A stretch of DNA of 64,000 nucleotides, from the sequence record MK250028.1; one strand, written 5' to 3'. Positions 26,968-47,138 of the stretch are shown here, piece after piece. The notes under the pieces were generated by a model. The model was given only the letters and a program-made list of their open reading frames with translations. It had not been told where the DNA came from and did no database searches. Position numbers and translations under genes: made by a program. The number at the start of each line of letters is the position of its first letter. The first letter of the stretch is position 1.

Positions 26968-26976
26968 TTTAATTAT

Positions 26977-29139: not shown

Positions 29140-29169
29140 AAATAAATAATTAAAATACATTTATTTTTA

Positions 29170-31289: not shown

Positions 31290-31376
31290 TATAAATAAAA
31301 GTCTTCATATTAGTTTATGAAGACTTTTTCTTTTTTATGACTATATAAATGTTAATTAACTATAATTTAATAATAG

Positions 31377-32531: not shown

Positions 32532-33204
32532 TATTAAATCATTGTTTGTTGTAGAAGAAGATACTGCAAATAAAGATAAAGTTGAAATTAAGCAGGATAA
32601 AGTAGAACCTGCTGTAAAAAAGCAAGAAGTAAACGTAGAACAACCAGTAAAAACTGAAGATACTAATACAAATGATGAATCAAAATCTCCTACTGATGAA
32701 GTGAACCATGAATTCCTTGATAAACTTTGCAATTATTTGGAAACATGTAAAATTGAAGGTGGCGATTATATGCAATTGAAGAAAGCAGCAAATAGTGAGG
32801 GTATGCAATGTATTCCCGATGAATCGGTTAGGTTCCAAGCTGCATTTGCAACACTTAAGAGTGTAAATCCTAACCTTACAAAGGATATTATTCTTTCTTC
32901 TATTGATACTTATATTAATGAGATGAATAAGCAACGAGATATTGCTATTGATCAAGTTGAAAAGAAACGTAAGATTAATGTAGGAGACAAGTCTAAAGCT
33001 ATTGCAGATAAACAAAAACAAATTGCAGATCTTCAAAATGAAATTGTTAAGTTATCTACCGAGGTATCAACAATGAAAGAAGAAGTTGATAAAGCAGATG
33101 AAGAATGTAATAGAAATGCACGAGAATTTACGAATGCTGTTAATATTATTGTTAACGCATTGGAATCAGATAAGAAAAAGATTTCAGAAAAATTAGTAGG
33201 TTAA
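32515..33204 (+). CDS. coiled-coil protein of the PspA-like/OmpA-ABC module
   Basis: low-complexity N-terminus, GGDYMQL motif, long C-terminal coiled coil. Confidence 0.75.
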   Translation: MIMGFNIKSLFVVEEDTANKDKVEIKQDKVEPAVKKQEVNVEQPVKTEDTNTNDESKSPTDEVNHEFLDKLCNYLETCKIEGGDYMQLKKAANSEGMQCIPDESVRFQAAFATLKSVNPNLTKDIILSSIDTYINEMNKQRDIAIDQVEKKRKINVGDKSKAIADKQKQIADLQNEIVKLSTEVSTMKEEVDKADEECNRNAREFTNAVNIIVNALESDKKKISEKLVG

Positions 33205-33212
33205 ATTAATAT

Positions 33213-33395
33213 ATGAAAGTAATAATTAAGAATTATGATTCTACAAAAGCAAATGATATTGTAATTCCTGTTGAAAATAATATGGATAAACATGTAGACT
33301 TTTCTAGCGGTTATGTAGTATTATCAGATGGAAATAATGTTAAGAAAGTTTATATTGATTTTAACAAATATCCTGAAGTAGAATTAGATTTATAA
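33213..33395 (+). CDS. small hypothetical protein
   Basis: 60-aa ORF between module genes. Confidence 0.5.
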   Translation: MKVIIKNYDSTKANDIVIPVENNMDKHVDFSSGYVVLSDGNNVKKVYIDFNKYPEVELDL

Positions 33396-33416
33396 TATAT
33401 AAAAATATTTTAAAGT

Positions 33417-34484
33417 ATGTCAGATTATAGTACAACAGATGTTATTAATGTTGCGAAGAATAAAGTATCACGATGGGAGAAACCTGGTGGTACAACGGGT
33501 ATGATTGTATTGGGTGTTGCCGTTGGTGCTATTGCAATTAATATTACACCTATTATGAATTTTATTGCGGCTGCTTGTGCAAGTACACTTAGTGCAATTG
33601 GAATGGCTGCTGCTCTTTTCCTTGTATTATATTGTTTGTTTGACCCACGTATTCGTAATATAGGTTCAACTATCTATTTTATGATTATGAGAAAGGTTGA
33701 AGGACTTCTCGTAGATTATGATCCTATTTCTATTGTGAAAAGAAAGATTGCAGAGATGAATAAGAAAATTCAGGAGATTACTGATAATATGGGTAAACTT
33801 CGTGGATTGATTGATAAATCAGAGAAACGTATTCAGGAAAAGAGAAAACAATGTGATCATGATTTTCAAATGCTTAATAAGTATAAGCAAACAGGAAAGA
33901 TGCAAGATGCTGCTGTTTATGAAAGACAAGTAGCAAGACTTACAGAAGTAATTAAGAATTCTGAAGCGAGACTTACTCAATCAAAGCAGTGGTATGAGAT
34001 TATGGGCAAACTTAAACATCAGGCAGACCTTACAGTTCTTGATGCAACAAATGAGATTAATGAACGCGTAGAAGAATGGGAAATGATTAAGGCACAACAC
34101 AAGGCATTCACTTCTATTGTAGGTATTATCAACGGTAAGGATGATCAGTTCAGTTTGTTTACTCGTGCAATGGATCATATGGCAGATGATATTTCTCAGA
34201 AGCTTGGTGAGATGTCATTTATTATTGAGGAAACCGGAGGTTTGATGTCAAAGATTGATATGGATAATCTTGTGATGTCTGATAAAGCAAATGCTCTTCT
34301 TGCTCAATATAATGCAGGTGGATTGGATGCGGTTCTCCTTGGTAGTTTTGCAAATCAACCAATTGAACATCAGCCAACAGAAACCGTAGAATTTAAGGAA
34401 GTAGAATACGCAAAACCTAATAGTAATGCAAGTTCTATTACAAATAATAAACAACAAACGCTTAGTCAACCTAATTGGTTCTAA
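33417..34484 (+). CDS. membrane-anchored PspA/IM30-like coiled-coil protein
   Basis: two N-terminal hydrophobic helices, then DPISIVKRKIAEM and a long helical hairpin. Confidence 0.6.
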   Translation: MSDYSTTDVINVAKNKVSRWEKPGGTTGMIVLGVAVGAIAINITPIMNFIAAACASTLSAIGMAAALFLVLYCLFDPRIRNIGSTIYFMIMRKVEGLLVDYDPISIVKRKIAEMNKKIQEITDNMGKLRGLIDKSEKRIQEKRKQCDHDFQMLNKYKQTGKMQDAAVYERQVARLTEVIKNSEARLTQSKQWYEIMGKLKHQADLTVLDATNEINERVEEWEMIKAQHKAFTSIVGIINGKDDQFSLFTRAMDHMADDISQKLGEMSFIIEETGGLMSKIDMDNLVMSDKANALLAQYNAGGLDAVLLGSFANQPIEHQPTETVEFKEVEYAKPNSNASSITNNKQQTLSQPNWF

Positions 34485-34588
34485 GAATTATTTTATCATT
34501 CATTTCATTAATTATATTTTTTATTTAATCTTAGTGAACTATATGGATTTATTTCTATAGTTCACTTTTTTATTTAATATTTTATGTG

Positions 34589-34596
34589 TATCTTTG
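34589..34596 (+). promoter_or_regulatory. Bacteroidetes -7 box TATCTTTG
   Basis: ATGTGTATCTTTGTATTGT upstream of 34634. Confidence 0.72.
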
Positions 34597-34633
34597 TATT
34601 GTAAATTATTTAACTAATTAAAATATAGAAATT

Positions 34634-34975
34634 ATGTTAAAGGTCGTAGATACATCATATTATATAATTAATAATAAAGAAAAAAAAGAATTCTTTATAT
34701 ATTATGATATAAACCATAAGATTGATTGTAATATGTCTTTATGGGATATTATGTTTGATTTACAGATTGAAGATGTAAATGAAGATAATAAAGATTTTCT
34801 TTTACAAGAATTCTTTAAAAAGAATTGGACACGATTCTTTATGATTAAATCTATTCCTTATGATACTATGGTAAATGTATTACCATGGGATAGTATTTTA
34901 AATATGGTAAATCAAATTGTGCAAACAATAGTTAAATATGAAGATTTAAAAGCTATTCCATCAAACAATAAGTAA
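34634..34975 (+). CDS. hypothetical protein
   Basis: 113-aa ORF with its own promoter. Confidence 0.7.
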   Translation: MLKVVDTSYYIINNKEKKEFFIYYDINHKIDCNMSLWDIMFDLQIEDVNEDNKDFLLQEFFKKNWTRFFMIKSIPYDTMVNVLPWDSILNMVNQIVQTIVKYEDLKAIPSNNK

Positions 34976-35045
34976 TTTTTAAAATAAAAGAATAATAGAA
35001 ATAAACAAATTAATTTAGTAACTTTAATAAAAGATTTTTAAAATT

Positions 35046-36629
35046 ATGGCAAATGTAGTTTTGCGACCTTGGGTAAAGGTTGTAGGAGTTATTGCGGTAG
35101 TTGCCGCTATTATGTTTGGTGCATCGAAGTTTTTCGGTGGTAATAGTGATGATAAGTCATCTTCTAATAGTGGAGGATTGTTTAGTAACATTTTCTCTGG
35201 TAGTGATGATAACGTTATTACTATTGGTACAAATACATATGCAGGATTCCTTCCATTTATGTATTTGAATAATGGCCTTAATCCTAATGAGGATTGCCCC
35301 ATTTACAAGGAATATGGTATTAAGTTGAAGATTGTCGTACAAGATGATTTTGCTGCTGGTCGAGCGGCATTTAAGAACGGCGATATTGATATTATCTATT
35401 GTACTGCAGATGCTCTTCCTGTTGAAATGAGTGAAGGATCTGATATGAATGATGCGAAATTCTTTAATATTTCTAACTGGTCACGTGGTGCTGATGCCAT
35501 TGTAGTTAATAAAGGAATTCAGAATGTAAGCGGACTTATTGGTAAGGTTGTTTGTTGTTCACAGGGTACAGCATCTCATACACTTTTGTTGAATACACTT
35601 GAGACAAATGGTATTGGAACAGATAAAGTAAACATGAGTAATTCTGTTGATCCAAATAAGGTTAATGTGAAGGTTGTAGATAGTGGCTTGGATGCAGCAA
35701 GTGCATTCCGTGCAGGTTCATGTGATGCAGCAGTTGTATTCTCTCCAGATGATCAGGATTTGGTTGCAACTGTTAAGGGAGCGCATGTATTGATTTCTAC
35801 AAAACAAGCATCAAATATTATTTGTGATGGTTTGATTGCAAAGCAGAGTTATCTTGATTCTAATAAGGAAAATGTAAAGAAACTTATTTCTGCATTGTTG
35901 TGGGCAAATAACCTTATGAATACTGATAGTAAAGCTGTAGCAACAGCAGCAAAGGCATTTGCAACTGCATATAATACAGATGAGAATTTCGCTATTAATG
36001 GTTCAAAGAATATTCATTATGTCACATTGGGTGATGCTCAGAATTTCTTTGGGTTGAATAGCTCATATACAGGTGTAAAGGGAGATGAATTGTATTCAAA
36101 GATGGCTCGTACATATGAGTCTCTTGGACTTTGTAAGCATCCACTTGCATGGAGGAAAGTATCTTATTCTGATATTATTGAGAGTATTGCATCTGAGCCT
36201 GATAAGGTAAAGGGCGATCAGTCTGCAGAAGCAGGTCCAAAGTTTAATGAAACATCTATATCAGATGCAGAAACGAAGACAGCAATTTCAGACAAGAAGG
36301 TAACTATTGAATATGGTGTAAATAGTGATATTCTTGATAACGCAGCACAGAGTATTATTGATAAGGAATTTGCTGGTATTGCAAAACAGTTTGCAGGTTC
36401 AAAGATTCGAATTATTGGTAATACAGATAATACAGGTAATTATGCATATAATGTAGATTTGTCTCGTAGACGTGCACAGTCTGTTGCTAATTATCTTGTA
36501 AAAGAATATGGATTTGATAAGAACCGTTTCATTATTATTGGTAATGGTCCAAAGCGTGCCGTTGCAGATGGTGTAGTAGGAGATAATAAGTCATATCGTT
36601 CTACTGATTTTCAGTTGATTTCAGAGTAA
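35046..36629 (+). CDS. ABC substrate-binding protein (NMT1/SsuA-like) fused to an OmpA-like peptidoglycan-binding domain
   Basis: N-terminal TM anchor, NWSRGADAIVV and GTASHTLL SBP motifs, C-terminal IIGNTDNTG...NVDLSRRRAQSVANYL. Confidence 0.88.
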   Translation: MANVVLRPWVKVVGVIAVVAAIMFGASKFFGGNSDDKSSSNSGGLFSNIFSGSDDNVITIGTNTYAGFLPFMYLNNGLNPNEDCPIYKEYGIKLKIVVQDDFAAGRAAFKNGDIDIIYCTADALPVEMSEGSDMNDAKFFNISNWSRGADAIVVNKGIQNVSGLIGKVVCCSQGTASHTLLLNTLETNGIGTDKVNMSNSVDPNKVNVKVVDSGLDAASAFRAGSCDAAVVFSPDDQDLVATVKGAHVLISTKQASNIICDGLIAKQSYLDSNKENVKKLISALLWANNLMNTDSKAVATAAKAFATAYNTDENFAINGSKNIHYVTLGDAQNFFGLNSSYTGVKGDELYSKMARTYESLGLCKHPLAWRKVSYSDIIESIASEPDKVKGDQSAEAGPKFNETSISDAETKTAISDKKVTIEYGVNSDILDNAAQSIIDKEFAGIAKQFAGSKIRIIGNTDNTGNYAYNVDLSRRRAQSVANYLVKEYGFDKNRFIIIGNGPKRAVADGVVGDNKSYRSTDFQLISE

Positions 36630-36701
36630 TTAAAATAAATTATAAACATGCGGTTTATAGAAAATAATTTTTATTAAATTCTATAAACCGCATTTTTAAT
36701 T

Positions 36702-37199
36702 ATGAAATATAAGCATGAATTAATAGGTAATAAAGTATTAATTATATGTGATTGTGATGGTATAAGTATTCATCGAATATATTGTGCATATATATTGGGT
36801 GAAGTTATTGATTATAATCCTATTACAAATGAAATAAGTATTAGGATAATTAATAATGATATGAATTACTATAGAATGTACAAATTATTTTATAGTAAAT
36901 TAGGAACACGTACATATTTTGAATTTAAACTTAATACATATGATCCTTTTGATCATAAATACTGTTCAGATAATCGTTTAGGATATATAGATCCAAGGGA
37001 CTATAATGATTTATGGTGGTATGAAGCATATTCAGGTAATGAAGCAATATCATTATTAAAAAATAACCTATTAGAAACAAAAGATAAACCTGTATATAAT
37101 TATTGTTATCTATCTACTGATTGTTATGGTAGTTTTAAATCTAAAAAAGAATATTTAACATATCTTTTAAATGAATTAAGTAATGAAAATACAGAATGA
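36702..37199 (+). CDS. paralog family member 1 (KVLII..YC family)
   Basis: MKYKHELIGNKVLIIC...RIYCAYILG. Confidence 0.7.
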   Translation: MKYKHELIGNKVLIICDCDGISIHRIYCAYILGEVIDYNPITNEISIRIINNDMNYYRMYKLFYSKLGTRTYFEFKLNTYDPFDHKYCSDNRLGYIDPRDYNDLWWYEAYSGNEAISLLKNNLLETKDKPVYNYCYLSTDCYGSFKSKKEYLTYLLNELSNENTE

Positions 37200-37623
37200 T
37201 TTAATAGGTAAAAAAGTACTAATTATTCATACATATGTTAGTAAATTCTTTAGGAGTTATTGTACATACCATATAGCAACAATTAAATATTATTATCCAT
37301 CAGGTAATTTTATTATTGTAGAATGTCCGAATATTAATCGCACAAGATTTACATTAATAGATCATGATGATCCATTTATAAATAAAGATTATTCAGATAA
37401 AAAATTGGCAATGAATTTTTCAACTAATGATGGATGGTATTATGTATTTACAAATAAATCTTCAATCAGACAATTAGAATATAATTTAATACATTATAAA
37501 AATAAACGTTCATTCAATAGCTGTAGAATGATAGTTTCTACGGGACGTTTAATGACAACAAAAGAACGGAAAAACTGTTTTGAAACATTATTAAGTAAAA
37601 TACAAGATGAAATATCGAAATGA
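37183..37623 (+). CDS. paralog family member 2
   Basis: MKIQNDLIGKKVLII...RSYCTY. Confidence 0.7.
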   Translation: MKIQNDLIGKKVLIIHTYVSKFFRSYCTYHIATIKYYYPSGNFIIVECPNINRTRFTLIDHDDPFINKDYSDKKLAMNFSTNDGWYYVFTNKSSIRQLEYNLIHYKNKRSFNSCRMIVSTGRLMTTKERKNCFETLLSKIQDEISK

Positions 37624-38065
37624 CTTAATAGATAAGAAAGTATTAATTATATGTAATAGTTCTGGTCCTAACAACTGGAATCATTATTGTAGTTATGTTG
37701 TTGGGAAAGTAATAAGTTATAATCCATCTATTAATTCTATAATGATTGAATATGGTGATAAAACACGAAACTATTTTTCTTTAATTGATTATAATGATCC
37801 ATTTAAGAAACATAATGATAGTTATAATAGAGGACTATATAAACGATTAGCATATAAAATACCATTGAATAGATATTCAGAAAGTTGGTGGTATGATGTC
37901 TTTTCATTACAATCTGCAGAAAAATTATTAAATCATAATATTAAACATTCACGAGAAAAATATGTATATGGTGAATGTATATTATCAAAAGTATGTTATA
38001 ATCATATAAGTAAAAAGAATTTTTTTGAATTATTATTAAAAGAATTAAAAGATGAATCTAATTAA
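37607..38065 (+). CDS. paralog family member 3
   Basis: MKYRNDLIDKKVLIIC...HYCSYVVG. Confidence 0.7.
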   Translation: MKYRNDLIDKKVLIICNSSGPNNWNHYCSYVVGKVISYNPSINSIMIEYGDKTRNYFSLIDYNDPFKKHNDSYNRGLYKRLAYKIPLNRYSESWWYDVFSLQSAEKLLNHNIKHSREKYVYGECILSKVCYNHISKKNFFELLLKELKDESN

Positions 38066-38885
38066 ACGTTTATTTAAATTTGGAGGAACTTCTGATTTTG
38101 GTACGTTAACAAATGTAATTATTAGTATCATAGGTGCTGTTATTATCATTATGGGATGGCATTTCATTTCTGCATATGATATTGTATCTAGTAATATTCT
38201 TCCAGATCCATTTAAGGTAATTGGTAGTATTCCTACACTTATTACTGAAAATCATTTGTTTGCAAATATTTGGTATACAGTTAAACTAAATCTTTCATGT
38301 TATGTATATGCAATTTTACTATCATTTCCAATAGGATTTTTTATAGCATTATATCCTATTAATAATATACTATTTGGAAAATATATTAATTCTGTAAGAT
38401 TTATTCCATTGCCTTCTATTACAGGAATTTTCTTAGCAATATTTGGACTTACATTTGGAATGAAAGTATGGTTTCTTACTGTTGCAATTATGATTTACAT
38501 TATTCCTTCTGTTGTTAATAAGGTAAATGATTTACAAAATCCTGCTAATGAAAAAGATAATGTATATCTTCAGACCGCACAAACAATGGGTATGTCTGCA
38601 TGGCAGAAGTTCAGATATGTATATTTCCCTTATGTAACAGGTGGTGTAGTTGATTCTTGTATTGATTTGCTTGCAATTAGTTATAGTTATGTAGTTATTG
38701 CAGAAATGATTTATAAGGATGGAACTATAAGTGGTATGGGTGCATTGATTAATACGATGGTAAGACAATCACAAATGTCTTCCGCATATGCATTGTTATT
38801 CTTAATTATTATTATTGGTTGCGTACAGGATTTCTTGTTTAAGAAAGGTGCAAGACTATTATTTCCTTACAAATATAAAAATTAA
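38052..38885 (+). CDS. ABC transporter permease (NitT/TauT/SsuC-like)
   Basis: six TM segments, LPDPFKV, EAA-loop equivalent YLQTAQTMGMSAWQKFRYVYFP. Confidence 0.9.
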   Translation: MNLIKRLFKFGGTSDFGTLTNVIISIIGAVIIIMGWHFISAYDIVSSNILPDPFKVIGSIPTLITENHLFANIWYTVKLNLSCYVYAILLSFPIGFFIALYPINNILFGKYINSVRFIPLPSITGIFLAIFGLTFGMKVWFLTVAIMIYIIPSVVNKVNDLQNPANEKDNVYLQTAQTMGMSAWQKFRYVYFPYVTGGVVDSCIDLLAISYSYVVIAEMIYKDGTISGMGALINTMVRQSQMSSAYALLFLIIIIGCVQDFLFKKGARLLFPYKYKN

Positions 38886-38893
38886 TAAAGATT

Positions 38894-39883
38894 ATGAGTG
38901 ATTTTAAAACATTATTTGGACAAAATAATCAAGAGGATAAGAAAACACCTATCCTGTTAGAACAAGAAAAAAATATTAATTCATCTACAAATGATTCCAG
39001 TATTCCTGATGTAAGTAATAATGTAGATAAGCCAAATACACCAGATGTAAGTTTACCTAATAATCAGAAAAAAGATCGGGGTGATGGTAAAATAGATGTT
39101 GTTAATTTTAAAAATTTAACACAAATATTTAATAAAGGTAAGAAAAATGAATATAAATTATTTGAAAATTTCTCTTTGAATATAAATGATATTCCGAATG
39201 ATTTTCAATCCGTGAGTATTATGGGCACATCTGGCTGTGGAAAAAGCAGATTAGTACGTCTTTTATGTGGATTGGATGACGTTCAATCTGGAAGTGTTTC
39301 TGTATATGGTAAATCATTATCAGAATTTGGTAATATTCCTATGGTATTTCAAAATCATAGTAATAGTAATTATCCTTGGATGAAAATTATAGATAATGTA
39401 ATGTTACCAATGATTATTAGAGGATTTTCTAAAAAAGATGCGTATGAGAAAGCATTACAATTGATTAAGTTAGTTGGACTTGAAGGAAAAGAAAACGATT
39501 ATCCAAATATGCTAAGTGGCGGACAAAATCAACGTATAGCAATTAGTAAATGTCTTGCTTCGAATTCTCAAATTATTGTATTAGATGAAGCAACTGGCGC
39601 ATTAGATATAAAAATGAAAAAAGAGATTCAAAATATTATTTTAAAAATATTATATGATTCAAACGTAGATCCTACTATTATTAATATTACTCATAGTATT
39701 GAAGAGGCTCTATATATAAGTAATAAAATTTTTATATTAAAAGCTAACCCTTGCGGTATTGTTAAAGTTATGAATATTCATTATCCAAATGAAGAAAATA
39801 TGCACCGAGATGAATGGATTTTTCAAACAGAAGAGTATAAAAAATATTATTTAGAATTATCAAAAACATTATCTAATATTTAA
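38894..39883 (+). CDS. ABC transporter ATP-binding protein (NitT/TauT-like)
   Basis: Walker A GTSGCGKS, signature LSGGQNQR, Walker B VLDE, H-loop ITHSIEEA. Confidence 0.93.
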   Translation: MSDFKTLFGQNNQEDKKTPILLEQEKNINSSTNDSSIPDVSNNVDKPNTPDVSLPNNQKKDRGDGKIDVVNFKNLTQIFNKGKKNEYKLFENFSLNINDIPNDFQSVSIMGTSGCGKSRLVRLLCGLDDVQSGSVSVYGKSLSEFGNIPMVFQNHSNSNYPWMKIIDNVMLPMIIRGFSKKDAYEKALQLIKLVGLEGKENDYPNMLSGGQNQRIAISKCLASNSQIIVLDEATGALDIKMKKEIQNIILKILYDSNVDPTIINITHSIEEALYISNKIFILKANPCGIVKVMNIHYPNEENMHRDEWIFQTEEYKKYYLELSKTLSNI

Positions 39884-39937
39884 ATAGATAAATATAATGG
39901 ATTCATAATTATTTATGAATTTATATTTTGCAAAGTT

Positions 39938-39967
39938 GAGCATATTACTAAATTTAGTAATATGCTC
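39938..39967 (+). terminator. intrinsic terminator-like hairpin
   Basis: GAGCATATTACTAA/TTAGTAATATGCTC followed by a T tract. Confidence 0.7.
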
Positions 39968-40013
39968 TTTTATTTTATAGATAAATATAATGCAAAATAT
40001 AAATTAAATAATT

Positions 40014-40979
40014 ATGAGAAATATTACACATGATGAATTTATCACATGTGCTAGATCTATACACGGTGATAAATATGATTATTCATAGTCAAAGTTTATT
40101 AATAAATCTACGTTAATTAAAGTATCTGATAATATACATGGTATTTTTGAAATTCTTCCATTTAAACATTTATTATACGATGGATATAATAAAAATTATT
40201 TAAATAGTTATGCGAATGAATACAAAAAACATTTTATAGAAGTATGTAAATTAGTTCATAATAATAAATATGATTATTCAAAAACAGTATATATACATTC
40301 ATAAACAAAAATGTTAATAACATGTCCTATACATGGTGATTTTTATCAATTACCAATGTCACATATACATGGTAAAGGTTGTAGTAAATGTGGTGATTTA
40401 TCTACAGCTTATAAACAAGCATATACAACTGAAGAATTTATTAATAAATCAAAATAGATACATGGTAATAAATATGATTATTCTAATGTACATTATATAA
40501 GTAACAAATATAAGGTTATTATAGGATGTCCTATACATGGTAATTTTTTATAGTCTCCTGATAAACATTTAAATGGTCATGGTTGTCCAAAATGTGTTTT
40601 ATATAAATTAGAAAATACAATATCATTATTACTTGATAACAATAATATTAAATATAATAAAAATTATAAAGAATTTAAATGGTTAATAAATGATATTAAT
40701 CATTCATTAGAATTAGATTTCTATATACCTGAATATAATATTGCTATAGAATGTTAGGGTAAATAGCATTTTGAACCAGTTGAAAAATTTGGAGGAAATG
40801 AAGCATATTAAATATAGGTTAAAAATGATTAGATAAAATAGACATTATGTAAATAGCATAATATAAAATTATGTTATTTTTGTGACAAATATAACTATAT
40901 AAATAATTATAAATTAGGATATTTAACATATAAAACAGAAAATTTATTAGAATATATACGATTTCATTTATTAGTTTAA
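40014..40979 (+). pseudogene. degenerate homing endonuclease (TAG=Gln; two premature TAA)
   Basis: three H(G/N)xKYDYS...(C)xIHG repeats, GCPKC, nuclease LDFYIPEYNIAIECQGKQH; in-frame TAA at 40302 and 40809. Confidence 0.8.
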
Positions 40980-40984
40980 TATAC

Positions 40985-41332
40985 ATTTCAATAGCCCGTT
41001 CACTTGCATGTGATTCAAAATTACTTATGTTAGATGAATATTCGTCAGGTCTTGATTATTTCACTAAATTTGAATTACAAGATCTTCTATTAAGTATTTT
41101 TAATAATAGAGATGTAGATAGAACATTCTTGATAGTTACTCATAATATTTCAGAGGCTGTATATCTTTCAAATCGTATTTATATATTGGAACCAAATCCA
41201 TGTAGAATCAAGGATGTAATTGATATTAAATTCAGTCAACCAAGAACACAAGCTATTCGTGAAACAGATGAATTTAAAAATTATCAAGCTAAAGTTCTTA
41301 AAGCATTAAATGAAACAATTAATAATAAGTAA
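40985..41332 (+). pseudogene. orphan 3' half of an ABC ATPase gene
   Basis: ISIARSLACDSKLLMLDEYSSGLD...IVTHNISEAVYLSNRI begins right after the position of the signature motif; no Walker A. Confidence 0.85.
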
Positions 41333-41343
41333 TTTTAAAAATT

Positions 41344-41679
41344 ATGACAAAACATATTATAACATTTGGTGATCTTAATTCTGGAGATCATATTTTTAGA
41401 TATAGAATTGTTAAAGACAAAGCTAAATTAGAAACATTAGTAGTACAAGATATTAAAATTACAAATGATAAAGCTATAATAATTATAAAAGATTCATCCA
41501 TAATTTATACTTTTGATAAAGAACGAACATATATTATGGGCGGTAATAATGATGATTGGAGTAGTTCTGTTATTGTCTCTGATTATGAATTAGTGGAATT
41601 CATTAAAACTGTTATTAATATAACAAAACAACCACTTATAAGACAACATGTTAATTTAATAAATTTTATATCAGATTGA
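41344..41679 (+). CDS. hypothetical protein
   Basis: 111-aa ORF. Confidence 0.65.
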   Translation: MTKHIITFGDLNSGDHIFRYRIVKDKAKLETLVVQDIKITNDKAIIIIKDSSIIYTFDKERTYIMGGNNDDWSSSVIVSDYELVEFIKTVINITKQPLIRQHVNLINFISD

Positions 41680-41737
41680 AATATAAAAAGGTGAGATAAT
41701 ATACTAAACTATCTCACCTTTTTTCTTTATATATAAT

Positions 41738-42187
41738 ATGAAAATATTAAATGATATAGTTAATAAAAAAGTATTAATAATATATAAATGTAATGGTCCT
41801 GCTGGATGGCATAGAGATTATTGTGGTTATAAAATTGGGAAAATAGTAGAATATAATATTGAAAATAATACTGTTAATATTGAAGATAAAAAGAAAAATA
41901 TAAAAACATATAAAATTATAGATAAAAAAGATCCATTTAATTTAAATTTAATACAAAATAATGATAATAGATTCGCATATTATTATATTTCAAACTATAG
42001 GCAAATACGTGAATGGGAAAATGTTTTTATATATAATGATGCATTAACTATTTTAAAAAATAGTATTAAACAATCACATTCACAATATGTATATAAACTA
42101 TTTTGTTTATCTTCATTTTCATATGGTAAAAAAACAAAGAAAAGATTTTTAAGAGATCTATTAAAAGAATTAGAAGAAAATTATTAA
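41738..42187 (+). CDS. paralog family member 4
   Basis: MKILNDIVNKKVLIIYKCNGP...RDYCGYKIG. Confidence 0.7.
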   Translation: MKILNDIVNKKVLIIYKCNGPAGWHRDYCGYKIGKIVEYNIENNTVNIEDKKKNIKTYKIIDKKDPFNLNLIQNNDNRFAYYYISNYRQIREWENVFIYNDALTILKNSIKQSHSQYVYKLFCLSSFSYGKKTKKRFLRDLLKELEENY

Positions 42188-42215
42188 TAATATTTTTTGT
42201 TTAAAATAAAATGTG

Positions 42216-42223
42216 TATCTTTG
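42216..42223 (+). promoter_or_regulatory. Bacteroidetes -7 box TATCTTTG
   Basis: ATGTGTATCTTTGTATTGT upstream of 42265. Confidence 0.72.
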
Positions 42224-42264
42224 TATTGTTAATAAAATAATGAACAATTAAAAATATAAACAAT

Positions 42265-42591
42265 ATGAAAGCAAATTTTGTAACGGTTATCAAGAAGAGA
42301 GCAATCAAGAATGTACCAGCATTTCAAGATTTCTCAATGAAACAGATTAAGGTTATTAGTAATTCACCTAATTATCCAAATTCTGTAACTTTATCTATGG
42401 ACATTTATTGTGATAATGTTGATGGTTATATTTTTAATAATGCATCTACAAATGAACAATATGCATTGACATCTGTTCAACTTAGTGACGCATTACGTAA
42501 GATGATTAGTAATAAAAAGTGTTATAAGCCTAACAGTAAGGAAGATTTACTTAGACTTACATTTGATACTATTGAATCTTTTAAATTTTAA
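42265..42591 (+). CDS. hypothetical protein
   Basis: 108-aa ORF with its own promoter. Confidence 0.7.
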   Translation: MKANFVTVIKKRAIKNVPAFQDFSMKQIKVISNSPNYPNSVTLSMDIYCDNVDGYIFNNASTNEQYALTSVQLSDALRKMISNKKCYKPNSKEDLLRLTFDTIESFKF

Positions 42592-42603
42592 TTAATTTAA
42601 ATG

Positions 42604-42632
42604 TAGACAATAATACATTATTAATATATAAT
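42604..42632 (+). promoter_or_regulatory. TAGACA-N17-TATAAT promoter upstream of the tRNA
   Basis: TAGACA 42604-42609 and TATAAT 42627-42632. Confidence 0.6.
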
Positions 42633-42691
42633 ATATATAAATTATTTGATTAAACAAATTAATGAAAAATTAAAAATAATTTATTAAAATG

Positions 42692-42722
42692 TAGACAATA
42701 TCAAATAAATAACATATAAATA
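42692..42722 (+). promoter_or_regulatory. TAGACA-N17-TATAAATA promoter upstream of the tRNA
   Basis: second tandem copy of the same motif. Confidence 0.6.
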
Positions 42723-42840
42723 ATATAATAATTAAAAACAAACGCTTATTTGATTTTCGTAGCGTTATGGATAAGTTGATAGAATTCAGAAATTCCTTTT
42801 AAGACGAATACACATGGAATGGTCCATTGGTGGAATTGGT

Positions 42841-43149
42841 AAAGTGTTTGCCTGCATTAATTTGTAGAATCCATCAAATTCAGTATCAGTTAGGATTAAA
42901 TTTTAAATATTAGTAGTTGCTATTGACGAAAATATTGACAATAATTAATTTATTGTTACCTGAGGAATAAGTGTTTATTTAATAAACAACGAAGAAGCTG
43001 ACTAAGAAAACCTAAGGTCTTCATAAGAAGATAGCTTGGTAATACTGAGCCAAGATAATTTTTAATTATAAGGTGCAGAGACTATACGGTGGGAACTAAT
43101 AGCAAGTTAAGATATAGTCCAAACTTTATAGAAATATAAAGAGTTTTTG
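42841..43149 (+). ncRNA. group I intron in the tRNA D-loop (309 nt, no ORF)
   Basis: P1 GGU-AAA/UUU-GCC with U.G at the 5' splice site, P10 GUGUUU/AGACAC, P7 GACUA 43080 / UAGUC 43115, terminal G 43149. Confidence 0.88.
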
Positions 43150-43164
43150 AGACACGAGGGACTT

Positions 43165-43512
43165 AAAAAATTTGAGTGCTCTATTGAGAAATCATAGAAG
43201 TAGAATCTCCCTAACGAAACGGAAGCCTAATTATTGGTGACAATAATGGTGGTGACGAACTCACTAAGTTGTTATAGAACGTTAATCTATATTAAATGTA
43301 AATTGAAGTGTTACAGCATAAATAGCGAAGAGACTATAGAGGAGATACCTAAGTTAAAGTACACGAAGAATAATCAATTAGATTATCACTATATATGAAG
43401 AGTATATAGTTTTATAATAAGGAATGCGCATTACTTTAATATGGTAGTAAAATAGTCCAGACTACAACATCTTAATAATTAAGATGGCTTGTATTAAAGC
43501 AAGAGTAGTAAG
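43165..43512 (+). ncRNA. group I intron in the tRNA anticodon, U34/A35 (348 nt, no ORF)
   Basis: P1 ACUU-AAA/UUU-GAGU with U.G at the splice site, P7 GACUA 43332 / UAGUC 43453, terminal G 43512. Confidence 0.9.
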
Positions 43513-43568
43513 AAAATCCCTTGGGCAGAAATGCCCGTGCCGGTTCGAATCCGGCATGGACTACATAT

Positions 43569-43607
43569 AAAAGTCTGATAATCAATAGCTTAGATTATCA
43601 GACTTTT
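43569..43607 (+). terminator. intrinsic terminator after the tRNA
   Basis: AAAAGTCTGATAATC/GATTATCAGACTTTT hairpin. Confidence 0.78.
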
Positions 43608-43648
43608 ATTTTTATATAGTATATAAAGTATAATTAATATTTTTAATA

Positions 43649-44785
43649 ATGATTACAATTACAGAACAATATATAAAAGAGTACCAAAAGAAATTAGATG
43701 ATATTTCTAAATCATTTGATTTAGAGAAACAACATATTATAGTTGAAGAATTATCAATTAAAGTTTCTGCACCAGATTTTTGGGATGATTTTGAAAGTGC
43801 GACATCAATCACAAAAGAACTTAATACAGCAAAAGAAAAGATAGATGATGTTGAACATATGAAAATGCTTATTGATGAGTTATCAACTGCATTAATGTAT
43901 TATAAGGAATTTGAAGGTAAAGATGAAGAAGAATATATAAATCTAGCGAATTCTGAATTAATTAGTGAATTCAGTAAATTTGAGGATAAGTATAGATTTG
44001 TTGATCCTACAGATTCATTAGGAGCTGTATTAGACATTAATGCAGGTGCAGGAGGAACAGAAGCAAATGATTGGGCAAATATGTTATTCCGTATGTATGA
44101 GATGTGGGCAAAATCAAATAATTATAAGTTTAAAGTTTTATATTATTCAGAAGGGGATAAAGTAGGTATTAAAAATGTATCTATTGAAATTACTGGTAAT
44201 AATGCGTATGGAACATTAAAAGGTGAAACCGGTGTTCATAGAATGGTAAGGGTTTCACCATATAATGCACAAGGTAAACGTATGACTAGTTTTGCTGCAG
44301 TTTCTGTTGTGCCTTTAGTAGATAATTCTATCAAGGTTGAAATTGACGATTCTAAATTAACAATAGATACATTTAGATCTTCTGGTGCTGGTGGTCAAAA
44401 TGTAAATAAGGTAGAATCTGGTGTACGTGTAAATTATATGTATACAGATCCAGATACAGGTGAAACAGAAAAAATTCAAGTTGCAAATACAGAAACAAGA
44501 GATCAACCAAAGAATAAAGAAAGAGCAATGCAAATTCTTAAATCTATTCTTTATAAGAAAGCATTGGATAAACAATTAGCTAAGAAAAAAGAAATAGAAG
44601 ATGCAAAACTTAAAAATGAATGGGGTGCACAAATTAGATCTTATGTATTTGATGATAAGCGAGTAAAAGATCATCGTACAGGTTATCAAACAACTGATGT
44701 TGATTCTGTTATGAATGGAAATATAAATGGTTTTATAGAATCATATAATAATTGGATTATTGAGCAAGAAAATAATAGACTTTAA
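43649..44785 (+). CDS. prfB: peptide chain release factor 2
   Basis: GGTEANDWA, GETGVHRMVRVSPY (SPF-type motif), FRSSGAGGQNVNK (GGQ), WGAQIRSY; no internal frameshift. Confidence 0.95.
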   Translation: MITITEQYIKEYQKKLDDISKSFDLEKQHIIVEELSIKVSAPDFWDDFESATSITKELNTAKEKIDDVEHMKMLIDELSTALMYYKEFEGKDEEEYINLANSELISEFSKFEDKYRFVDPTDSLGAVLDINAGAGGTEANDWANMLFRMYEMWAKSNNYKFKVLYYSEGDKVGIKNVSIEITGNNAYGTLKGETGVHRMVRVSPYNAQGKRMTSFAAVSVVPLVDNSIKVEIDDSKLTIDTFRSSGAGGQNVNKVESGVRVNYMYTDPDTGETEKIQVANTETRDQPKNKERAMQILKSILYKKALDKQLAKKKEIEDAKLKNEWGAQIRSYVFDDKRVKDHRTGYQTTDVDSVMNGNINGFIESYNNWIIEQENNRL

Positions 44786-44842
44786 TTAAATATTTTCTTA
44801 TAAATAATTAATGAAATATTTTCCTATATAAAATAAATTATG

Positions 44843-44850
44843 TATCTTTG
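44843..44850 (+). promoter_or_regulatory. Bacteroidetes -7 box TATCTTTG
   Basis: TTATGTATCTTTGTATTGT upstream of 44898. Confidence 0.72.
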
Positions 44851-44897
44851 TATTGTTGATAATTAAATTAGTATAAACAATTAAAAATATAAAGGTT

Positions 44898-45119
44898 ATG
44901 AAAGTACGTATAGGAAGAGACGAAAAGTTCATTGAACTTGGTAAGTATGACGATATAACAATTATAGATGATGCTGGTACAGAGTATCGCATTGAAGCAA
45001 ATGATCCTTGTTATCAAGGTAATGGTATAAAAGTTTATGATATTGATGGGTGCATTCTTGTAAAACCATCTACATCAAATCTTGTACAAATTTTCTCGAC
45101 ATCAAAGATTGAGTTGTAA
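44898..45119 (+). CDS. hypothetical protein
   Basis: 73-aa ORF with its own promoter. Confidence 0.7.
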   Translation: MKVRIGRDEKFIELGKYDDITIIDDAGTEYRIEANDPCYQGNGIKVYDIDGCILVKPSTSNLVQIFSTSKIEL

Positions 45120-45174
45120 TATCTATAATTGTTTTATATGTTAATATGAAAATTTTAACTATAAAATATATTAT

Positions 45175-45702
45175 ATGGGTTGTCACACATGGGTTTATAA
45201 GCTAATCAGTTCGATGTCTAAAGATGAAATAAACAGAGAAATTGATTGTGTTATTAACGAACGTAAACAGCGTTTTTACATGTCTTCTAATGAGGATGAA
45301 TATGCAAATAGAATGGTAAAACTTACTAAAGATAGTTCTGTTGCACCAATGTCTTATGCAGATGCTATTAAACGTTATAAAGAAGCAAGAGAAGAAACAC
45401 AACTTATTATAGATAAGTTAACACTTGCTAAGCAAACAGGTGATTTATCTGTAATAACATATAAAAATGGATTTGATACATCAGAAGATGATACATATCT
45501 TTTCTTATGTACAAATACCCCATTTAGATGTTATGAATATACAGATAAACAATTTACAAATAAAGATGAATTGATTTCATATATACATTCAGTTGATCCA
45601 AAAAAAATTGAAGTTTATAATAATGATAAATCATTAGATGAACAGATATATGATTTCTTTAAACTTCATGGTGACAATAATTTATTATTTGAATTCGGTT
45701 AA
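45175..45702 (+). CDS. conserved phage hypothetical protein
   Basis: MGCHTW start, LLFEFG end. Confidence 0.7.
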   Translation: MGCHTWVYKLISSMSKDEINREIDCVINERKQRFYMSSNEDEYANRMVKLTKDSSVAPMSYADAIKRYKEAREETQLIIDKLTLAKQTGDLSVITYKNGFDTSEDDTYLFLCTNTPFRCYEYTDKQFTNKDELISYIHSVDPKKIEVYNNDKSLDEQIYDFFKLHGDNNLLFEFG

Positions 45703-45704
45703 AA

Positions 45705-46169
45705 ATGAGAACAAATAAGTTAAATGAATGTGTACTATCAATGATGTATACAAACATGGATTTAGAAATTGATTCTTATTCATTGTTATGTTGTTTAGAT
45801 GAAATTGGATTTACATATCCGCCCTATCCTAATTCAACTGAATATTTGAATATTGGTGAATCACGGAACCTTAGAGAATTTAATGAAACTAATAAACATG
45901 TATTCTATCACATGATTTATGATTTTATTAAATGGACATATGGAATATCTGTAAGTTTCTGGGAATCTAAATCAATATCATATAATGAAAGAGGAACAAT
46001 TGAAAAAGTTGATATTGAAGGTATGGATGAAACATCAGATATATATGGTATTATTACAAATATGGTATTTGATGATTTAAATACTGCATATAAAACTGTT
46101 GCACATATGATTGTTTCCGATTTAAATTGGAGACATAAACAAAAGAAAAAATTTTCTAATGTTAAATAA
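45705..46169 (+). CDS. hypothetical protein
   Basis: 154-aa ORF. Confidence 0.65.
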   Translation: MRTNKLNECVLSMMYTNMDLEIDSYSLLCCLDEIGFTYPPYPNSTEYLNIGESRNLREFNETNKHVFYHMIYDFIKWTYGISVSFWESKSISYNERGTIEKVDIEGMDETSDIYGIITNMVFDDLNTAYKTVAHMIVSDLNWRHKQKKKFSNVK

Positions 46170-46230
46170 GACTTTTTTAATAAACAAATATATACATAAT
46201 AATTAATAATATTTTAAATTCTATTTAAAC

Positions 46231-46791
46231 ATGGGATTGTTTGATTTTCTTAATAAGAATAAGTCAGAGGATGTAAGTACATTGTTTACTGACGAAAATA
46301 AAGGAAGTTGTGCTTCTGCAGCTGATGCATATAAGAAGTCTCGTTATGGAATTCTTAAGACTGATAAAATGATGCTTGAGGAATTTTTCACGGATGTTAA
46401 GCTTCTTGTAGAGCAGAAAAATATGGAGCGAAGCTATTGTGGAATGGTTCAAATCGGGGATGATATTATTAAGTACCTTCCTAAGATTAAGGATCGTCTT
46501 GGACGTCAGCTCGGTTATAAAGTAATTGTGTTGGATGATAATACAGTTATTACTAATAATGTATCAAATACAAAAGATATAATTAAGAGTGGACATACGT
46601 ATCTCCTTCTTATTTGGGATAAGTTGTCTGTAGAGGAAGTTGCAGAATATAATGCTACACATCCAGTAAATGATGATTCAGATGATACATCAACTGTTGA
46701 TTCATTGAAGCAAGATGAAGATACAAAGAAAGTTGAAACATCTGATACTTCAAAGAAAAACACAAAGTAGAAGAAACTTAATAAAAAATAA
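46231..46791 (+). CDS. hypothetical protein (TAG at 46768 read as Gln gives a 7-aa extension)
   Basis: code-11 stop is TAG; next TAA at 46789. Confidence 0.65.
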
Positions 46792-46802
46792 TTATCAATT
46801 TG

Positions 46803-46833
46803 TAGACAATTTGTTTATTAAGTAATATAAATA
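46803..46833 (+). promoter_or_regulatory. TAGACA-N17-TATAAATA promoter
   Basis: third copy of the motif found upstream of the tRNA. Confidence 0.6.
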
Positions 46834-46837
46834 TTAA

Positions 46838-47070
46838 GATAGAGAAAAAGGTGATAGTAATTATACATTTGATGCTTTTATAATTAACCATTTAATTTGT
46901 GTATAATTACTTTTCTTGTAAATATTTGGTTCGGTTAATTAACGAATATTTACAAACAAAGAAGAGAGAAGTAAAATGTTTTAGAAGAGAAACATTTTAC
47001 AAATGGAAAAGGAAAGATAGATATGAGGTGAAAAGTCGTTGTGATAACGGTTTTTCACCATTTTTATTTT
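46838..47070 (+). ncRNA. candidate structured small RNA (four hairpins)
   Basis: hairpins 46856-46911, 46916-46955, 46971-47000 and 47027-47059 plus T tract; purine-rich linkers; no convincing ORF. Confidence 0.45.
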
Positions 47071-47101
47071 TATAATATTTTCATAATTTAAAAATTATAT
47101 G

Positions 47102-47109
47102 TATCTTTG
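47102..47109 (+). promoter_or_regulatory. Bacteroidetes -7 box TATCTTTG
   Basis: ATATGTATCTTTGTATT upstream of 47139. Confidence 0.72.
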
Positions 47110-47138
47110 TATTATAATAATTTAAATATAGAACTATT

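What the first reader, a model, noticed from the sequence alone, without database searches (positions are those of the whole stretch)
38894..41332. Homing endonuclease cassette that swapped the 3' half of an ABC ATPase gene
Seen: the ATPase at 38894-39883 is complete, yet a second 3' half starts 5 nt after the endonuclease stop, at 40985. Fusing 38894-39535 (ending LSGGQNQR) to 40985-41332 (ISIARSLACDSKLLMLDEYSSGLD...THNISEA) gives a seamless canonical ATPase. So 39536-40984 behaves as an insert made of a divergent replacement 3' half (IAISKCLASNSQIIVLDEATGALD), a terminator hairpin, ATAAATA motifs and the endonuclease. Established: gene-fragment replacement by free-standing homing endonucleases is known for conserved genes such as fungal mitochondrial atp6. 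Inference: the target here is the ABC signature motif of an accessory transporter, an unusual homing site, and the displaced half is still an open frame.
Basis: partly seen in the sequence, partly recalled or inferred. Interest (0 to 1): 0.85.

Follow-up and report, generated by a model that had tools for sequence, protein, structure and literature searches.

The report
Mobile endonuclease cassette replacing a megaphage ABC ATPase
In this Prevotella Lak megaphage, a selfish endonuclease gene that brings its own foreign copy of an ABC-transporter ATPase has overwritten most of the resident ATPase gene and left its tail behind; related phages show the cassette has jumped repeatedly between lineages, a clear natural case of a known kind of gene drive.

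Summary

- **Source.** The window is Prevotella megaphage Lak-B1/B9.
- **Three parts confirmed.** The ATPase (38894-39883) is complete. An endonuclease gene lies at 40014-40979. A second ATPase 3' piece lies at 40985-41332.
- **Empty alleles.** Lak-A1, A2, C1 and two metagenome contigs carry one ATPase gene. Its tail matches the displaced piece.
- **Left boundary.** The imported DNA starts near 39070, not 39536. It runs to 40987 and holds almost a whole foreign ATPase core (about 40-47% identical to the resident type), a conserved terminator hairpin and the endonuclease.
- **Right boundary.** The border sits in the ABC signature motif, between LSGG and the next codon.
- **Spread.** In ten pairwise comparisons of five carriers, the tail tracks its own phage background. 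The cassette does not, so it spread horizontally and repeatedly.
- **Genetic code.** The endonuclease is written in the phage's TAG=Gln code. Read that way, four relatives have it fully intact and a fifth is shifted only at its extreme 3' end.
- **Decay here.** The window copy has two TAA stops and a 68-codon deletion.
- **Nuclease type.** The nuclease domain has a Vsr / I-Bth0305I-like fold.
- **Not tested.** Cleavage of the signature-motif site is inferred.

This is a new variant of a known kind.

The parts
38052..38885 (+). ABC permease gene. It is resident and acts as the left flank (homology arm).
   Evidence: 86-88% nt identity to empty alleles. Its dS tracks the phage background. Pfam BPD_transp_1 match is weak.
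38894..39070 (+). Resident 5' end of the ATPase gene: the N-terminal low-complexity linker, about 58 codons.
   Evidence: Homologous to the B-like empty allele L019 up to 39072. The linker follows the background in Lak-B (like L019) and in L012 (like Lak-A1).
39071..39883 (+). Imported (xenologous) ABC nucleotide-binding core, from codon ~60 to the stop. The boundary is uncertain by about 20 nt because GATGGTAAA is shared by both types.
   Evidence: No DNA homology to empty alleles. 40-47% aa identity to the resident type but 58-71% to another huge-phage/bacterial clade, in both halves. dN/dS is 0.05-0.14 between the two core subtypes.
39885..39992 (+). Cassette spacer: 15-nt direct repeats (39885-39899, 39978-39992) flanking a terminator-like hairpin at 39938-39967 plus a T-run.
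   Evidence: The alignment of the stretch 39870-40025, which contains this spacer, has 95% mean column identity across the five cassettes aligned; the stems are kept and the loops vary.
40014..40979 (+). Decayed free-standing homing endonuclease gene, read with TAG=Gln. It has 9 in-frame TAG codons. Lesions: TAA at 40302-40304 (GAA in relatives), TAA at 40809-40811 (TAG or CAA in relatives), and a 204-nt deletion of one Zn-finger module near 40577.
   Evidence: Family matches: phrog_559, 681 and 9084. The nuclease domain has a Vsr / I-Bth0305I fold.
40985..41332 (+). Displaced 3' remnant of the resident ATPase: 115 codons, from just after the signature motif to the stop. The first five codons (MLQR..) found in other carriers are missing here.
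   Evidence: 81% nt and ~93% aa identity to Lak-A/C tails. Its dS tracks the background. Remnants are interleaved with full-length genes in the tree.
41344..41679 (+). Downstream gene of unknown function. It is the right flank and is mosaic among lineages.

Best explanation
**What it is.** The region holds a mobile cassette of about 1.9 kb (window ~39071-40987). It consists of a foreign ABC ATPase core, a terminator hairpin, and a free-standing homing endonuclease gene written in the phage's TAG=Gln code.

**Proposed cycle.**
1. During co-infection, the endonuclease cuts the resident ATPase gene of cassette-free Lak phages in or next to the codons of the LSGGQ signature motif (inferred).
2. 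The break is repaired from a cassette-bearing genome.
3. The foreign and resident cores share no usable DNA homology. Recombination can therefore resolve only in the N-terminal linker or permease on the left, and in the resident 3' part on the right.
4. Every event thus copies the whole foreign core plus the endonuclease, and leaves the resident last ~117 codons stranded downstream.
5. The carried core replaces the function of the gene that the element interrupts, and its own site differs from the resident one.

**State in this window (Lak-B1).** The invasion is past. The endonuclease has decayed (two TAA stops and loss of one zinc-finger module). The remnant has lost its first codons but is otherwise still open because it is young.

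**Shown:** the anatomy, the empty and filled alleles, the horizontal spread, the code, and the nuclease fold.

**Inferred:** cleavage, its site, and immunity of the carried core.
For: **Identity and code**
- The window is Lak-B1/B9.
- TAG=Q is shown by the genome: gene blocks 16516-30684 and 48785-63627 need 1-23 in-frame TAG per gene.
- TAG codons in the endonuclease fall on conserved Gln columns of homologues, including one invariant column (ECQGKQHF).
- Lak recoding and a phage RF2 are reported in 10.1101/2021.08.26.457843.

**Empty and filled alleles**
- Empty alleles: Lak-A1, A2, C1, L019, L021. Lak-A1 and Lak-C1, the two searched, hold no close copy of the endonuclease gene.
- Filled alleles with a fully open endonuclease frame: L008, L011, L026, L027/L028; L012 is shifted only at its extreme 3' end.
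- L012 is 98-99% identical to Lak-A1 on both flanks. It differs by 2134 nt replacing 433 nt.
- The junction in the carriers L008, L011, L012, L026 and L027 reads HEG stop, then TATTT(TAT or GTT), then ATG TTR. CAA CG follows in four of them; L026 reads TAG CAA instead. The Lak-B copies lack this stretch through a 15-nt deletion.

**Horizontal spread**
- For the pair L026-L027, dS is 2.19 (permease), 1.99 (remnant), 0.10 (core) and 0.28 (endonuclease).
- For Lak-B4-L008, dS is 0.20 (permease), 1.04 (core) and 0.15 (endonuclease).
- Remnants do not form a clade among full-length resident genes: 6 label changes, no better than shuffled labels.

**Selection and family**
- Endonuclease dN/dS is 0.14-0.27.
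- New and old cores fall in separate clades with 100/100 support.
- Nuclease fold: I-Bth0305I Z 10.1 with rmsd 2.6 A; Vsr Z 9.7 and Foldseek E 8.5e-4.
Against: - No cleavage assay exists. The target site and the immunity of the carried core are inferred from junctions only.
- No genome was found with the foreign core plus endonuclease but no remnant, so the original donor is unknown.
- The left border is similar in all carriers, which also fits a single origin followed by ordinary recombination.
- Remnant-to-remnant dN/dS is very low (0.03-0.10). I explain this by repeated recent capture from functional genes, but it would also fit a functional remnant.
- dS values above 1 are saturated.
- Metagenome assemblies can be chimeric, although the architecture recurs in independent assemblies from several sources.
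Confidence: 0.8

Rival explanations
1. One reading: only the 3' half was swapped. 39536-40984 is the insert and 38894-39535 is the resident 5' half.
For: The motif order of the proposed fusion is seamless, and the remnant starts just after the signature motif.
Against: - The 5' half has no DNA homology to empty alleles from ~39072 onward.
- It is 43-47% identical to resident types but 63-71% identical to the foreign clade, the same pattern as the 3' half.
- There is no change of divergence pattern at 39535/39536.
Confidence: 0.03
2. Passenger model. The cassette spreads by ordinary homologous recombination between co-infecting Lak phages, perhaps because the foreign ATPase is advantageous. The endonuclease is a linked passenger that plays no part.
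For: - The flanks offer homology on both sides.
- The left border is similar in all carriers.
- The core is under purifying selection.
- The Lak-B lineage keeps the cassette although its endonuclease is dead.
Against: - Every close copy of this endonuclease (at least 88% identity) whose surroundings were read lies in this context, and every foreign core whose downstream DNA was read is followed by it.
- The endonuclease has dN/dS 0.14-0.27 and is fully open in four carriers (L012 is shifted only at its 3' end).
- It is more uniform across lineages than the core it travels with: dS 0.15 against 1.04 for Lak-B4 versus L008.
- The border lies exactly in a conserved motif, as is typical of homing sites.
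Confidence: 0.12
3. The downstream piece is a functional small gene: a half nucleotide-binding domain kept by selection, not a mere remnant.
For: - It is open in all carriers.
- dN/dS is 0.03-0.10 between carriers.
- An ATG start is present in L008, L011, L012, L026 and L027.
Against: - The remnants sit next to full-length genes of their own background with near-zero terminal branches.
- The ATG is the inherited Met codon of an LSGGMLQR allele.
- Lak-B lost the ATG and the first codons.
- L026 has a TAG at codon 3.
- Lak-B1 differs from B4 by 2 non-synonymous and 0 synonymous changes, one of them in the H-loop, THD to THN.
- The piece lacks the Walker A, Q-loop and signature motifs.
Confidence: 0.12
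4. An intron: RNA splicing removes 39536-40984, or the whole cassette, to restore a single ATPase.
Against: - No Rfam family matches at gathering score in the window, nor at E<=1 in 38800-41500.
- The upstream gene is complete, with its own stop and terminator.
- Its 3' half is under purifying selection.
- The resident 5' half needed for the old gene is absent.
Confidence: 0.02
5. In-situ tandem duplication of the ATPase gene followed by divergence and decay of the second copy, with an unrelated endonuclease insertion; or an assembly artefact.
For: Two ATPase-like pieces lie in tandem.
Against: - The new and old types fall in separate, deeply divergent clades with 100/100 support.
- Empty alleles carry only the old type.
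- The same architecture occurs in nine Lak-B genomes, three IMG/VR contigs and several ENA and Logan assemblies.
Confidence: 0.02

Closest known systems
Free-standing homing endonuclease genes of phages with co-conversion of flanking DNA (T4 seg and mob genes; the 'HEG islands' of ICP1 and other phages: PMC2790892, PMC2988022, PMC10448857)
   Same: - It is a separate ORF, not in an intron or intein.
- It shows presence/absence polymorphism at one locus.
- It lies at a boundary of genetic exchange, and neighbouring DNA is carried along.
- It has a modular array of DUF723/CapR-like zinc fingers, with a module gain or loss by recombination between repeats. The 204-nt difference between Lak-B1 and B4 matches what PMC10448857 describes for ICP1.
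   Different: - It sits inside the target gene rather than between genes.
- It carries a whole replacement core that is about 40-47% identical to the resident one, so the resident tail is displaced rather than converted.
- Its nuclease is Vsr-like, not GIY-YIG, HNH or T5orf172.
- It is written in a recoded stop codon.
Mitochondrial endonuclease genes accompanied by a C-terminal duplication of atp6, cob and similar genes in fungi (for example Endoconidiophora resinifera, PMC6279837; the Allomyces atp6 case is recalled from memory, not checked here)
   Same: A gene is followed by a displaced copy of its own C-terminal part, with endonuclease ORFs in between.
   Different: - Those cases involve organelles and LAGLIDADG or GIY-YIG enzymes, and usually only the 3' part is carried.
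- Here almost the whole catalytic core is foreign.
- Here the host is a 0.55-Mb phage.
- Here several independent invasions can be read from empty/filled allele pairs.
I-Bth0305I (EDxHD family) homing endonuclease and the Vsr / DUF559 nuclease fold
   Same: - These are the best structural matches of the C-terminal domain (Z 10.1 and 9.7).
- The profile also gives weak sequence matches to the Vsr-like domain of AbaSI (E 0.028) and to the 'Endonuclease-Like Protein' 3hrl (E 0.48).
- Some family members carry PF04480.
   Different: - I-Bth0305I is, as I recall, intron-encoded with a different DNA-binding part.
- Sequence identity is only 17%.
- The motif here is D..E-C-Q-G-x-Q-H..D..K. Correspondence to EDxHD was not established.
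Stop-codon recoding (TAG=Gln) as a gate for late genes in Lak and other gut phages (10.1101/2021.08.26.457843)
   Same: The window shows blocks of TAG-bearing genes and TAG-free genes, plus a phage RF2 gene.
   Different: Here a selfish gene with about two thirds of its Gln codons as TAG lies alone inside a TAG-free block. In the text passages I searched, that paper was not seen to discuss this for endonuclease genes.

Membership tests
Free-standing homing endonuclease gene (mobile by homing) | Present or absent at the same locus in close relatives, with otherwise collinear flanks | tested here: met
   L012 against Lak-A1: 98.7% and 98.3% identical flanks, with 2134 nt replacing 433 nt. The window against L019. 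Lak-A1 and C1 lack the gene altogether.
Free-standing homing endonuclease gene (mobile by homing) | The history of the element disagrees with that of its flanks (horizontal spread) | tested here: met
   dS table; sliding identity; remnant tree.
Free-standing homing endonuclease gene (mobile by homing) | Encodes a DNA endonuclease with a DNA-binding part | tested here: met
   Vsr / I-Bth0305I fold (pLDDT 86.5). Repeated Cys-rich modules; PF05265 is listed as a precomputed domain for the intact copies. Matches to phrog_559, 681 and 9084. Activity itself was not tested.
Free-standing homing endonuclease gene (mobile by homing) | Cuts the element-free allele at or near the insertion site, and the carrier is resistant | not testable with these tools
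   Only inferred. The right border is the same in the carriers L008, L011, L012, L026 and L027, and in the Lak-B copies it differs only by a 15-nt deletion; it lies within the LSGG | (M/Q)LQR codons. The carried core differs from the resident site in the next codons.
Free-standing homing endonuclease gene (mobile by homing) | Not embedded in a self-splicing intron or an intein | tested here: met
   No Rfam match. It has its own ATG, 130 nt after the ATPase stop and behind a terminator.
EDxHD (I-Bth0305I-type) homing endonucleases | Vsr-like catalytic fold | tested here: met
   3r3p_A: Z 10.1, rmsd 2.6 A over 92 of 97 residues. 1cw0_A: Z 9.7.
EDxHD (I-Bth0305I-type) homing endonucleases | The E-D-x-H-D catalytic motif | tested here: inconclusive
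   Invariant residues here are D59, E70, G73, Q75, H76 and D96, with K99 nearly invariant. There is no significant sequence match to 3r3p, so motif correspondence was not established.
HNH endonucleases (the label of phrog_559) | A beta-beta-alpha-metal fold with the H-N-H motif | tested here: not met
   No Pfam HNH match. The fold search gives Vsr and PD-(D/E)XK-type nucleases only. The PHROG name looks like a mislabel.
Group I intron with an endonuclease ORF | A ribozyme core flanking the ORF, with exons that join to one gene | tested here: not met
   The upstream gene is complete and selected.
ABC transporter ATPase, NitT/TauT-like | Walker A, Q-loop, LSGGQ signature, Walker B and H-loop in one chain, next to a permease and a binding protein | tested here: met
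   For 38894-39883: Pfam ABC_tran; best NCBIfam matches are SaoA, taurine and nitrate types, all below their cut-offs; motifs GTSGCGKS, LSGGQ, VLDE and ITHS are read directly. The piece 40985-41332 holds only Walker B (LMLDE), the D-loop and the H-loop, so it is a fragment.

The most novel reading that the evidence does not exclude
**A third way to live inside a coding gene.** The element neither splices at the RNA level (intron) nor at the protein level (intein). Instead it brings a divergent, cleavage-resistant replacement of the gene's catalytic core. It uses the stranded resident tail as its right homology arm for the next invasion.

**A translational gate.** The endonuclease is written largely in TAG codons although it sits in a standard-code block. 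It would therefore be made only after the phage has switched the cell to TAG=Gln. That would tie homing to late infection and make the gene untranslatable outside recoded phages.

A further possibility is that the stranded half-domain is expressed.
Probability: 0.3. Interest if true: 0.7.

Novelty: new variant of a known kind. Interest (0 to 1): 0.55.

Why it matters
- **A complete natural series.** The data hold empty alleles, fresh invasions, older invasions and a decaying copy. They come from uncultured 0.5-Mb gut phages that cannot yet be grown.
- **Gene flow between diverged lineages.** A selfish endonuclease moves an auxiliary transporter gene between Lak lineages that are saturated at synonymous sites. 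This explains local mosaicism in these genomes.
- **Annotation.** Reading the phage in the standard code makes an endonuclease that is fully open in four relatives look like debris.
- **A testable enzyme.** It offers a concrete substrate pair: a Vsr-like enzyme with zinc-finger arrays, and a predicted site in the ABC signature-motif codons. It is also a possible case of stop-codon recoding gating a mobile element.

Tried and rejected
- **My own first reading of the left border was wrong.** Comparison with Lak-A/C alone suggested codon ~12-17. The B-like empty allele L019 showed that the N-terminal linker is resident and that the border is near codon 59.
- **No whole genome is held for the window**. 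I used Lak records through handles instead.
- **No tRNA in the window**, so the suppressor tRNA was not seen here.
- **No RNA family found:** none at gathering score in the window, none at E<=1 around the cassette.
- **IMG/VR scan with the new ATPase** returned only identical copies.
- **PDB by sequence** gave nothing useful for the endonuclease and only weak Vsr-like hits with the profile.
- **Pfam** gives no hit above cut-off for the endonuclease.
- **No RNA run holds the stretch**.
- **The one read-laying run used assembled contigs only.** It showed that other runs carry GAA at 40302, CAA at 40809 and the extra module. It cannot speak to expression or allele frequencies.
- **No donor found** with the foreign core plus endonuclease but without a remnant.
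- **Complex prediction was not used.** No binding claim is made.
Full report
**1. Source and genetic code**

The stretch 38000-42000 is 100% identical to Prevotella phage Lak-B1 and Lak-B9, and 97-99.9% identical to the other Lak-B genomes.

The window itself shows that TAG is a sense codon in part of the genome.
- Under table 11, the genes of 16516-30684 and 48785-63627 fall apart.
- With TAG=Q they become long frames with 1-23 in-frame TAG each.
- The block 30696-48731 is TAG-free and ends its genes in TAA or TGA, with one TAG stop.
- This matches what is published for Lak phages: TAG to Gln, with a phage RF2 (10.1101/2021.08.26.457843).
- An RF2 gene lies at 43649-44785 (TIGR00020, 403 bits, above the cut-off).

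**2. What is at the coordinates**

- 38894-39883 is a complete 329-aa ABC ATPase. It follows an NMT1-like binding protein fused to an OmpA domain (35046-36629) and a permease (38052-38885).
- After the stop comes a 15-nt exact direct repeat (39885, 39978). It flanks a 13-pair hairpin with a T-run at 39938-39967.
- From 40014 to the TAA at 40977 runs one frame with 9 TAG and 2 TAA codons.
- From 40985 to 41332 an open frame encodes the part of an ABC ATPase that follows the signature motif.

**3. Empty alleles and the true extent of the insert**

Lak-A1, Lak-A2 and Lak-C1 carry a single 314-aa ATPase at this locus and no endonuclease.
- Their DNA aligns with the window only at 38012-38943 and from 40988 onward.
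- Their C-terminal part is the counterpart of the window's displaced piece (~93% aa identity).
- The rest of their gene is only ~40% identical to the window's ATPase.

Two further empty alleles with a Lak-B-like background, L019 and L021, refine the border.
- Window homology to L019 runs over 38012-39072 and 40988-46000.
- The N-terminal linker of about 58 codons is therefore resident.
- About 39071-40987 replaces some 460 nt of the resident gene.

Position 39536 is not a boundary.
- Both halves of the new core are 58-71% identical to one foreign clade and 40-47% identical to the resident type.
- Both halves show the same two subtypes and the same purifying selection.
- In a tree of ATPases, the new and old types lie in separate clades with 100/100 support.

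**4. Intact copies and the lesions in the window**

Relatives with the new-type ATPase carry the same arrangement. These are the 525-kb contig L008, and L011, L012, L026 and L027/L028.
- Under TAG=Q the endonuclease frame is fully open in L008, L026 and L027/L028 (389 aa) and in L011 (362 aa, a shorter C-terminus). Each has 10-12 TAG codons and no other in-frame stop. L012 (406 aa, 13 TAG in the listed frame) is open too, but an extra base near its 3' end shifts the last codons so that the frame runs on into the remnant.

Against these copies, the window copy has three lesions.
- TAA at 40302, where relatives have GAA.
- TAA at 40809, where they have TAG or CAA. This lies just before an invariant Asp and a nearly invariant Lys of the nuclease domain.
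- A 204-nt deletion of one zinc-finger module.

Lak-B4 shares only the first lesion.

About two thirds of the Gln codons of the endonuclease are TAG. That is more than in the late genes of the window.

**5. The junctions**

- In L008, L011, L012, L026 and L027 the endonuclease stop is followed by TATTT(TAT or GTT) and then ATG TTR. CAA CG follows in four of them; L026 reads TAG CAA instead. These are the codons M-L-Q-R that follow LSGG in a Lak-A-type resident gene.
- Lak-B1 and B4 lack 15 nt here, including the ATG.
- Most full-length resident genes read LSGGQLQR. Only Lak-A1, Lak-C1 and P0121 read LSGGMLQR.
- The junction was therefore probably formed once in a Lak-A-like allele, and at least its first six bases travel with the cassette (inference).
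- On the left, L012 keeps 52 Lak-A codons before the foreign sequence starts. L027 lacks a further 30 nt between two GATGGT repeats.

**6. Horizontal spread**

Synonymous divergence separates the cassette from its surroundings (NG86 method; values above 1 are saturated).

| Pair | Permease dS | Remnant dS | Core dS | Endonuclease dS |
|---|---|---|---|---|
| L026-L027 | 2.19 | 1.99 | 0.10 | 0.28 |
| L008-L012 | 0.72 | 0.84 | 0.21 | 0.13 |
| Lak-B4-L008 | 0.20 | 0.43 | 1.04 | 0.15 |

- In all ten pairs the remnant tracks the permease, while the core and the endonuclease do not.
- L012 is 98-99% identical to Lak-A1 on both flanks. It is a fresh invasion.
- In a tree of resident 3' parts, the remnants are scattered among full-length genes of their own background: 6 label changes, no better than shuffled labels, with near-zero terminal branches.
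- This also explains why remnant-to-remnant dN/dS is only 0.03-0.10. Most of that divergence accumulated while each tail was still part of a working gene.

There are signs of decay after capture.
- Loss of the first codons in Lak-B.
- A TAG at codon 3 in L026.
- Two non-synonymous and no synonymous changes between Lak-B1 and B4.

**7. The enzyme**

- It matches phrog_559 (E 5e-63), phrog_681 and phrog_9084 ('homing endonuclease'). It has about a thousand phage relatives, many annotated as homing endonucleases.
- The N-terminal two thirds are repeats of a Cys-rich module. PF05265 (DUF723) is listed as a precomputed domain for the intact copies. PMC10448857 describes such modules as DNA-binding units of phage endonucleases that gain and lose copies by recombination.
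- The C-terminal 145 residues fold with pLDDT 86.5.
- That model matches the I-Bth0305I catalytic domain best (Z 10.1, rmsd 2.6 A) and Vsr next (Z 9.7; Foldseek E 8.5e-4).
- The 'HNH' label of the PHROG is not supported.
- Endonuclease dN/dS among carriers is 0.14-0.27, so it has mostly been kept working.

**8. Mechanism**

Shown:
- a cassette with fixed ends that has moved between lineages;
- resident tails left behind;
- a functional, selected replacement core;
- a decaying endonuclease in Lak-B.

Inferred:
- the enzyme cuts cassette-free genomes near the LSGG | (M/Q)LQR codons;
- the insertion splits that site, and the carried core differs there (AAT CAA CGT ATA GCA ATT against TTA CAA CGT ACG TCA ATA);
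- repair can resolve only where donor and recipient are alike, which forces co-transfer of the whole core.

No intron is involved.

**9. Comparison and novelty**

- The behaviour is that of phage free-standing homing endonuclease genes (PMC2790892, PMC2988022, PMC10448857).
- The architecture is that of fungal mitochondrial genes followed by a displaced C-terminal copy with endonuclease ORFs (PMC6279837).
- New here:
  - the setting, a Lak megaphage auxiliary transporter;
  - the size of the carried replacement;
  - the Vsr-like enzyme with zinc-finger arrays;
  - its TAG-rich coding inside a standard-code block;
  - the series of empty, fresh and decayed alleles.
- My two paper searches on Lak phages and on phage homing endonucleases turned up no description of this locus. 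That is a limited check.
- I rate it a new variant of a known kind, of moderate to good interest.

**10. Limits**

- All relatives are metagenome assemblies.
- dS above 1 is saturated.
- Cleavage, expression and timing are untested.
- The original donor was not found.

Noticed in passing
window 43649-44785: A release factor 2 gene (TIGR00020, 403 bits, above the cut-off) lies in the TAG-free block, 2.3 kb downstream of the remnant. It fits the published code-switch machinery of Lak phages.
   Followed up: partly
window 30696-48731, against 16516-30684 and 48785-63627: The genome is split into TAG-free and TAG-bearing gene blocks. The endonuclease at 40014-40979 is the only TAG-bearing gene of its block. 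Gene 46231-46770 ends in TAG, so TAG still serves as a stop there.
   Followed up: partly
window 36702-38065 and 41738-42187: A family of ~150-aa paralogues (starting MKY(K/R)..LI.KKVLII) occurs in three overlapping tandem copies between the binding protein and the permease, with a fourth copy after the cassette. Copy number differs between lineages: 1 in Lak-A/C, L019 and L021; 2 in L010 and L026; 3 in Lak-B and L008. No family match was found.
   Followed up: no
window 35046-36629: The substrate-binding protein of the transporter is an NMT1-like domain fused to a C-terminal OmpA-like domain. This architecture is shared by distant huge-phage contigs (L014, L015, L017).
   Followed up: no
window 41344-41679: The gene just right of the remnant is mosaic. 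It is about 75% identical (by eye) to the Lak-A1 protein, looks only about a third identical by eye to those of L008 and L011 (47-60% nucleotide identity to L008), and is absent in Lak-C1 and A2. This may mark the right-hand limit of exchange tracts.
   Followed up: partly
window 14001-16000: GC content drops to 13.9%, against about 26% elsewhere. Only weak AT-rich tandem repeats were found, at 15653-15719.
   Followed up: partly
L001/L002 (Lak-A1/C1) ATPase signature motif; filled junctions in L008, L011, L012, L026, L027: Lak-A1, Lak-C1 and P0121 have the unusual signature LSGGM instead of LSGGQ. The same ATG TTR codons sit at the junction of L008, L011, L012, L026 and L027, including those in backgrounds whose own genes read LSGGQ; the Lak-B copies have lost them. 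This points to a single origin of the junction.
   Followed up: partly
Lak-B4 record MK250023.1 400301-400972 (locus L024); Lak-A1 record 208675-209328 (L023, L025): More distant paralogues of the same endonuclease family (33-47% identity), also with in-frame TAG, lie at other loci of Lak genomes.
   Followed up: no
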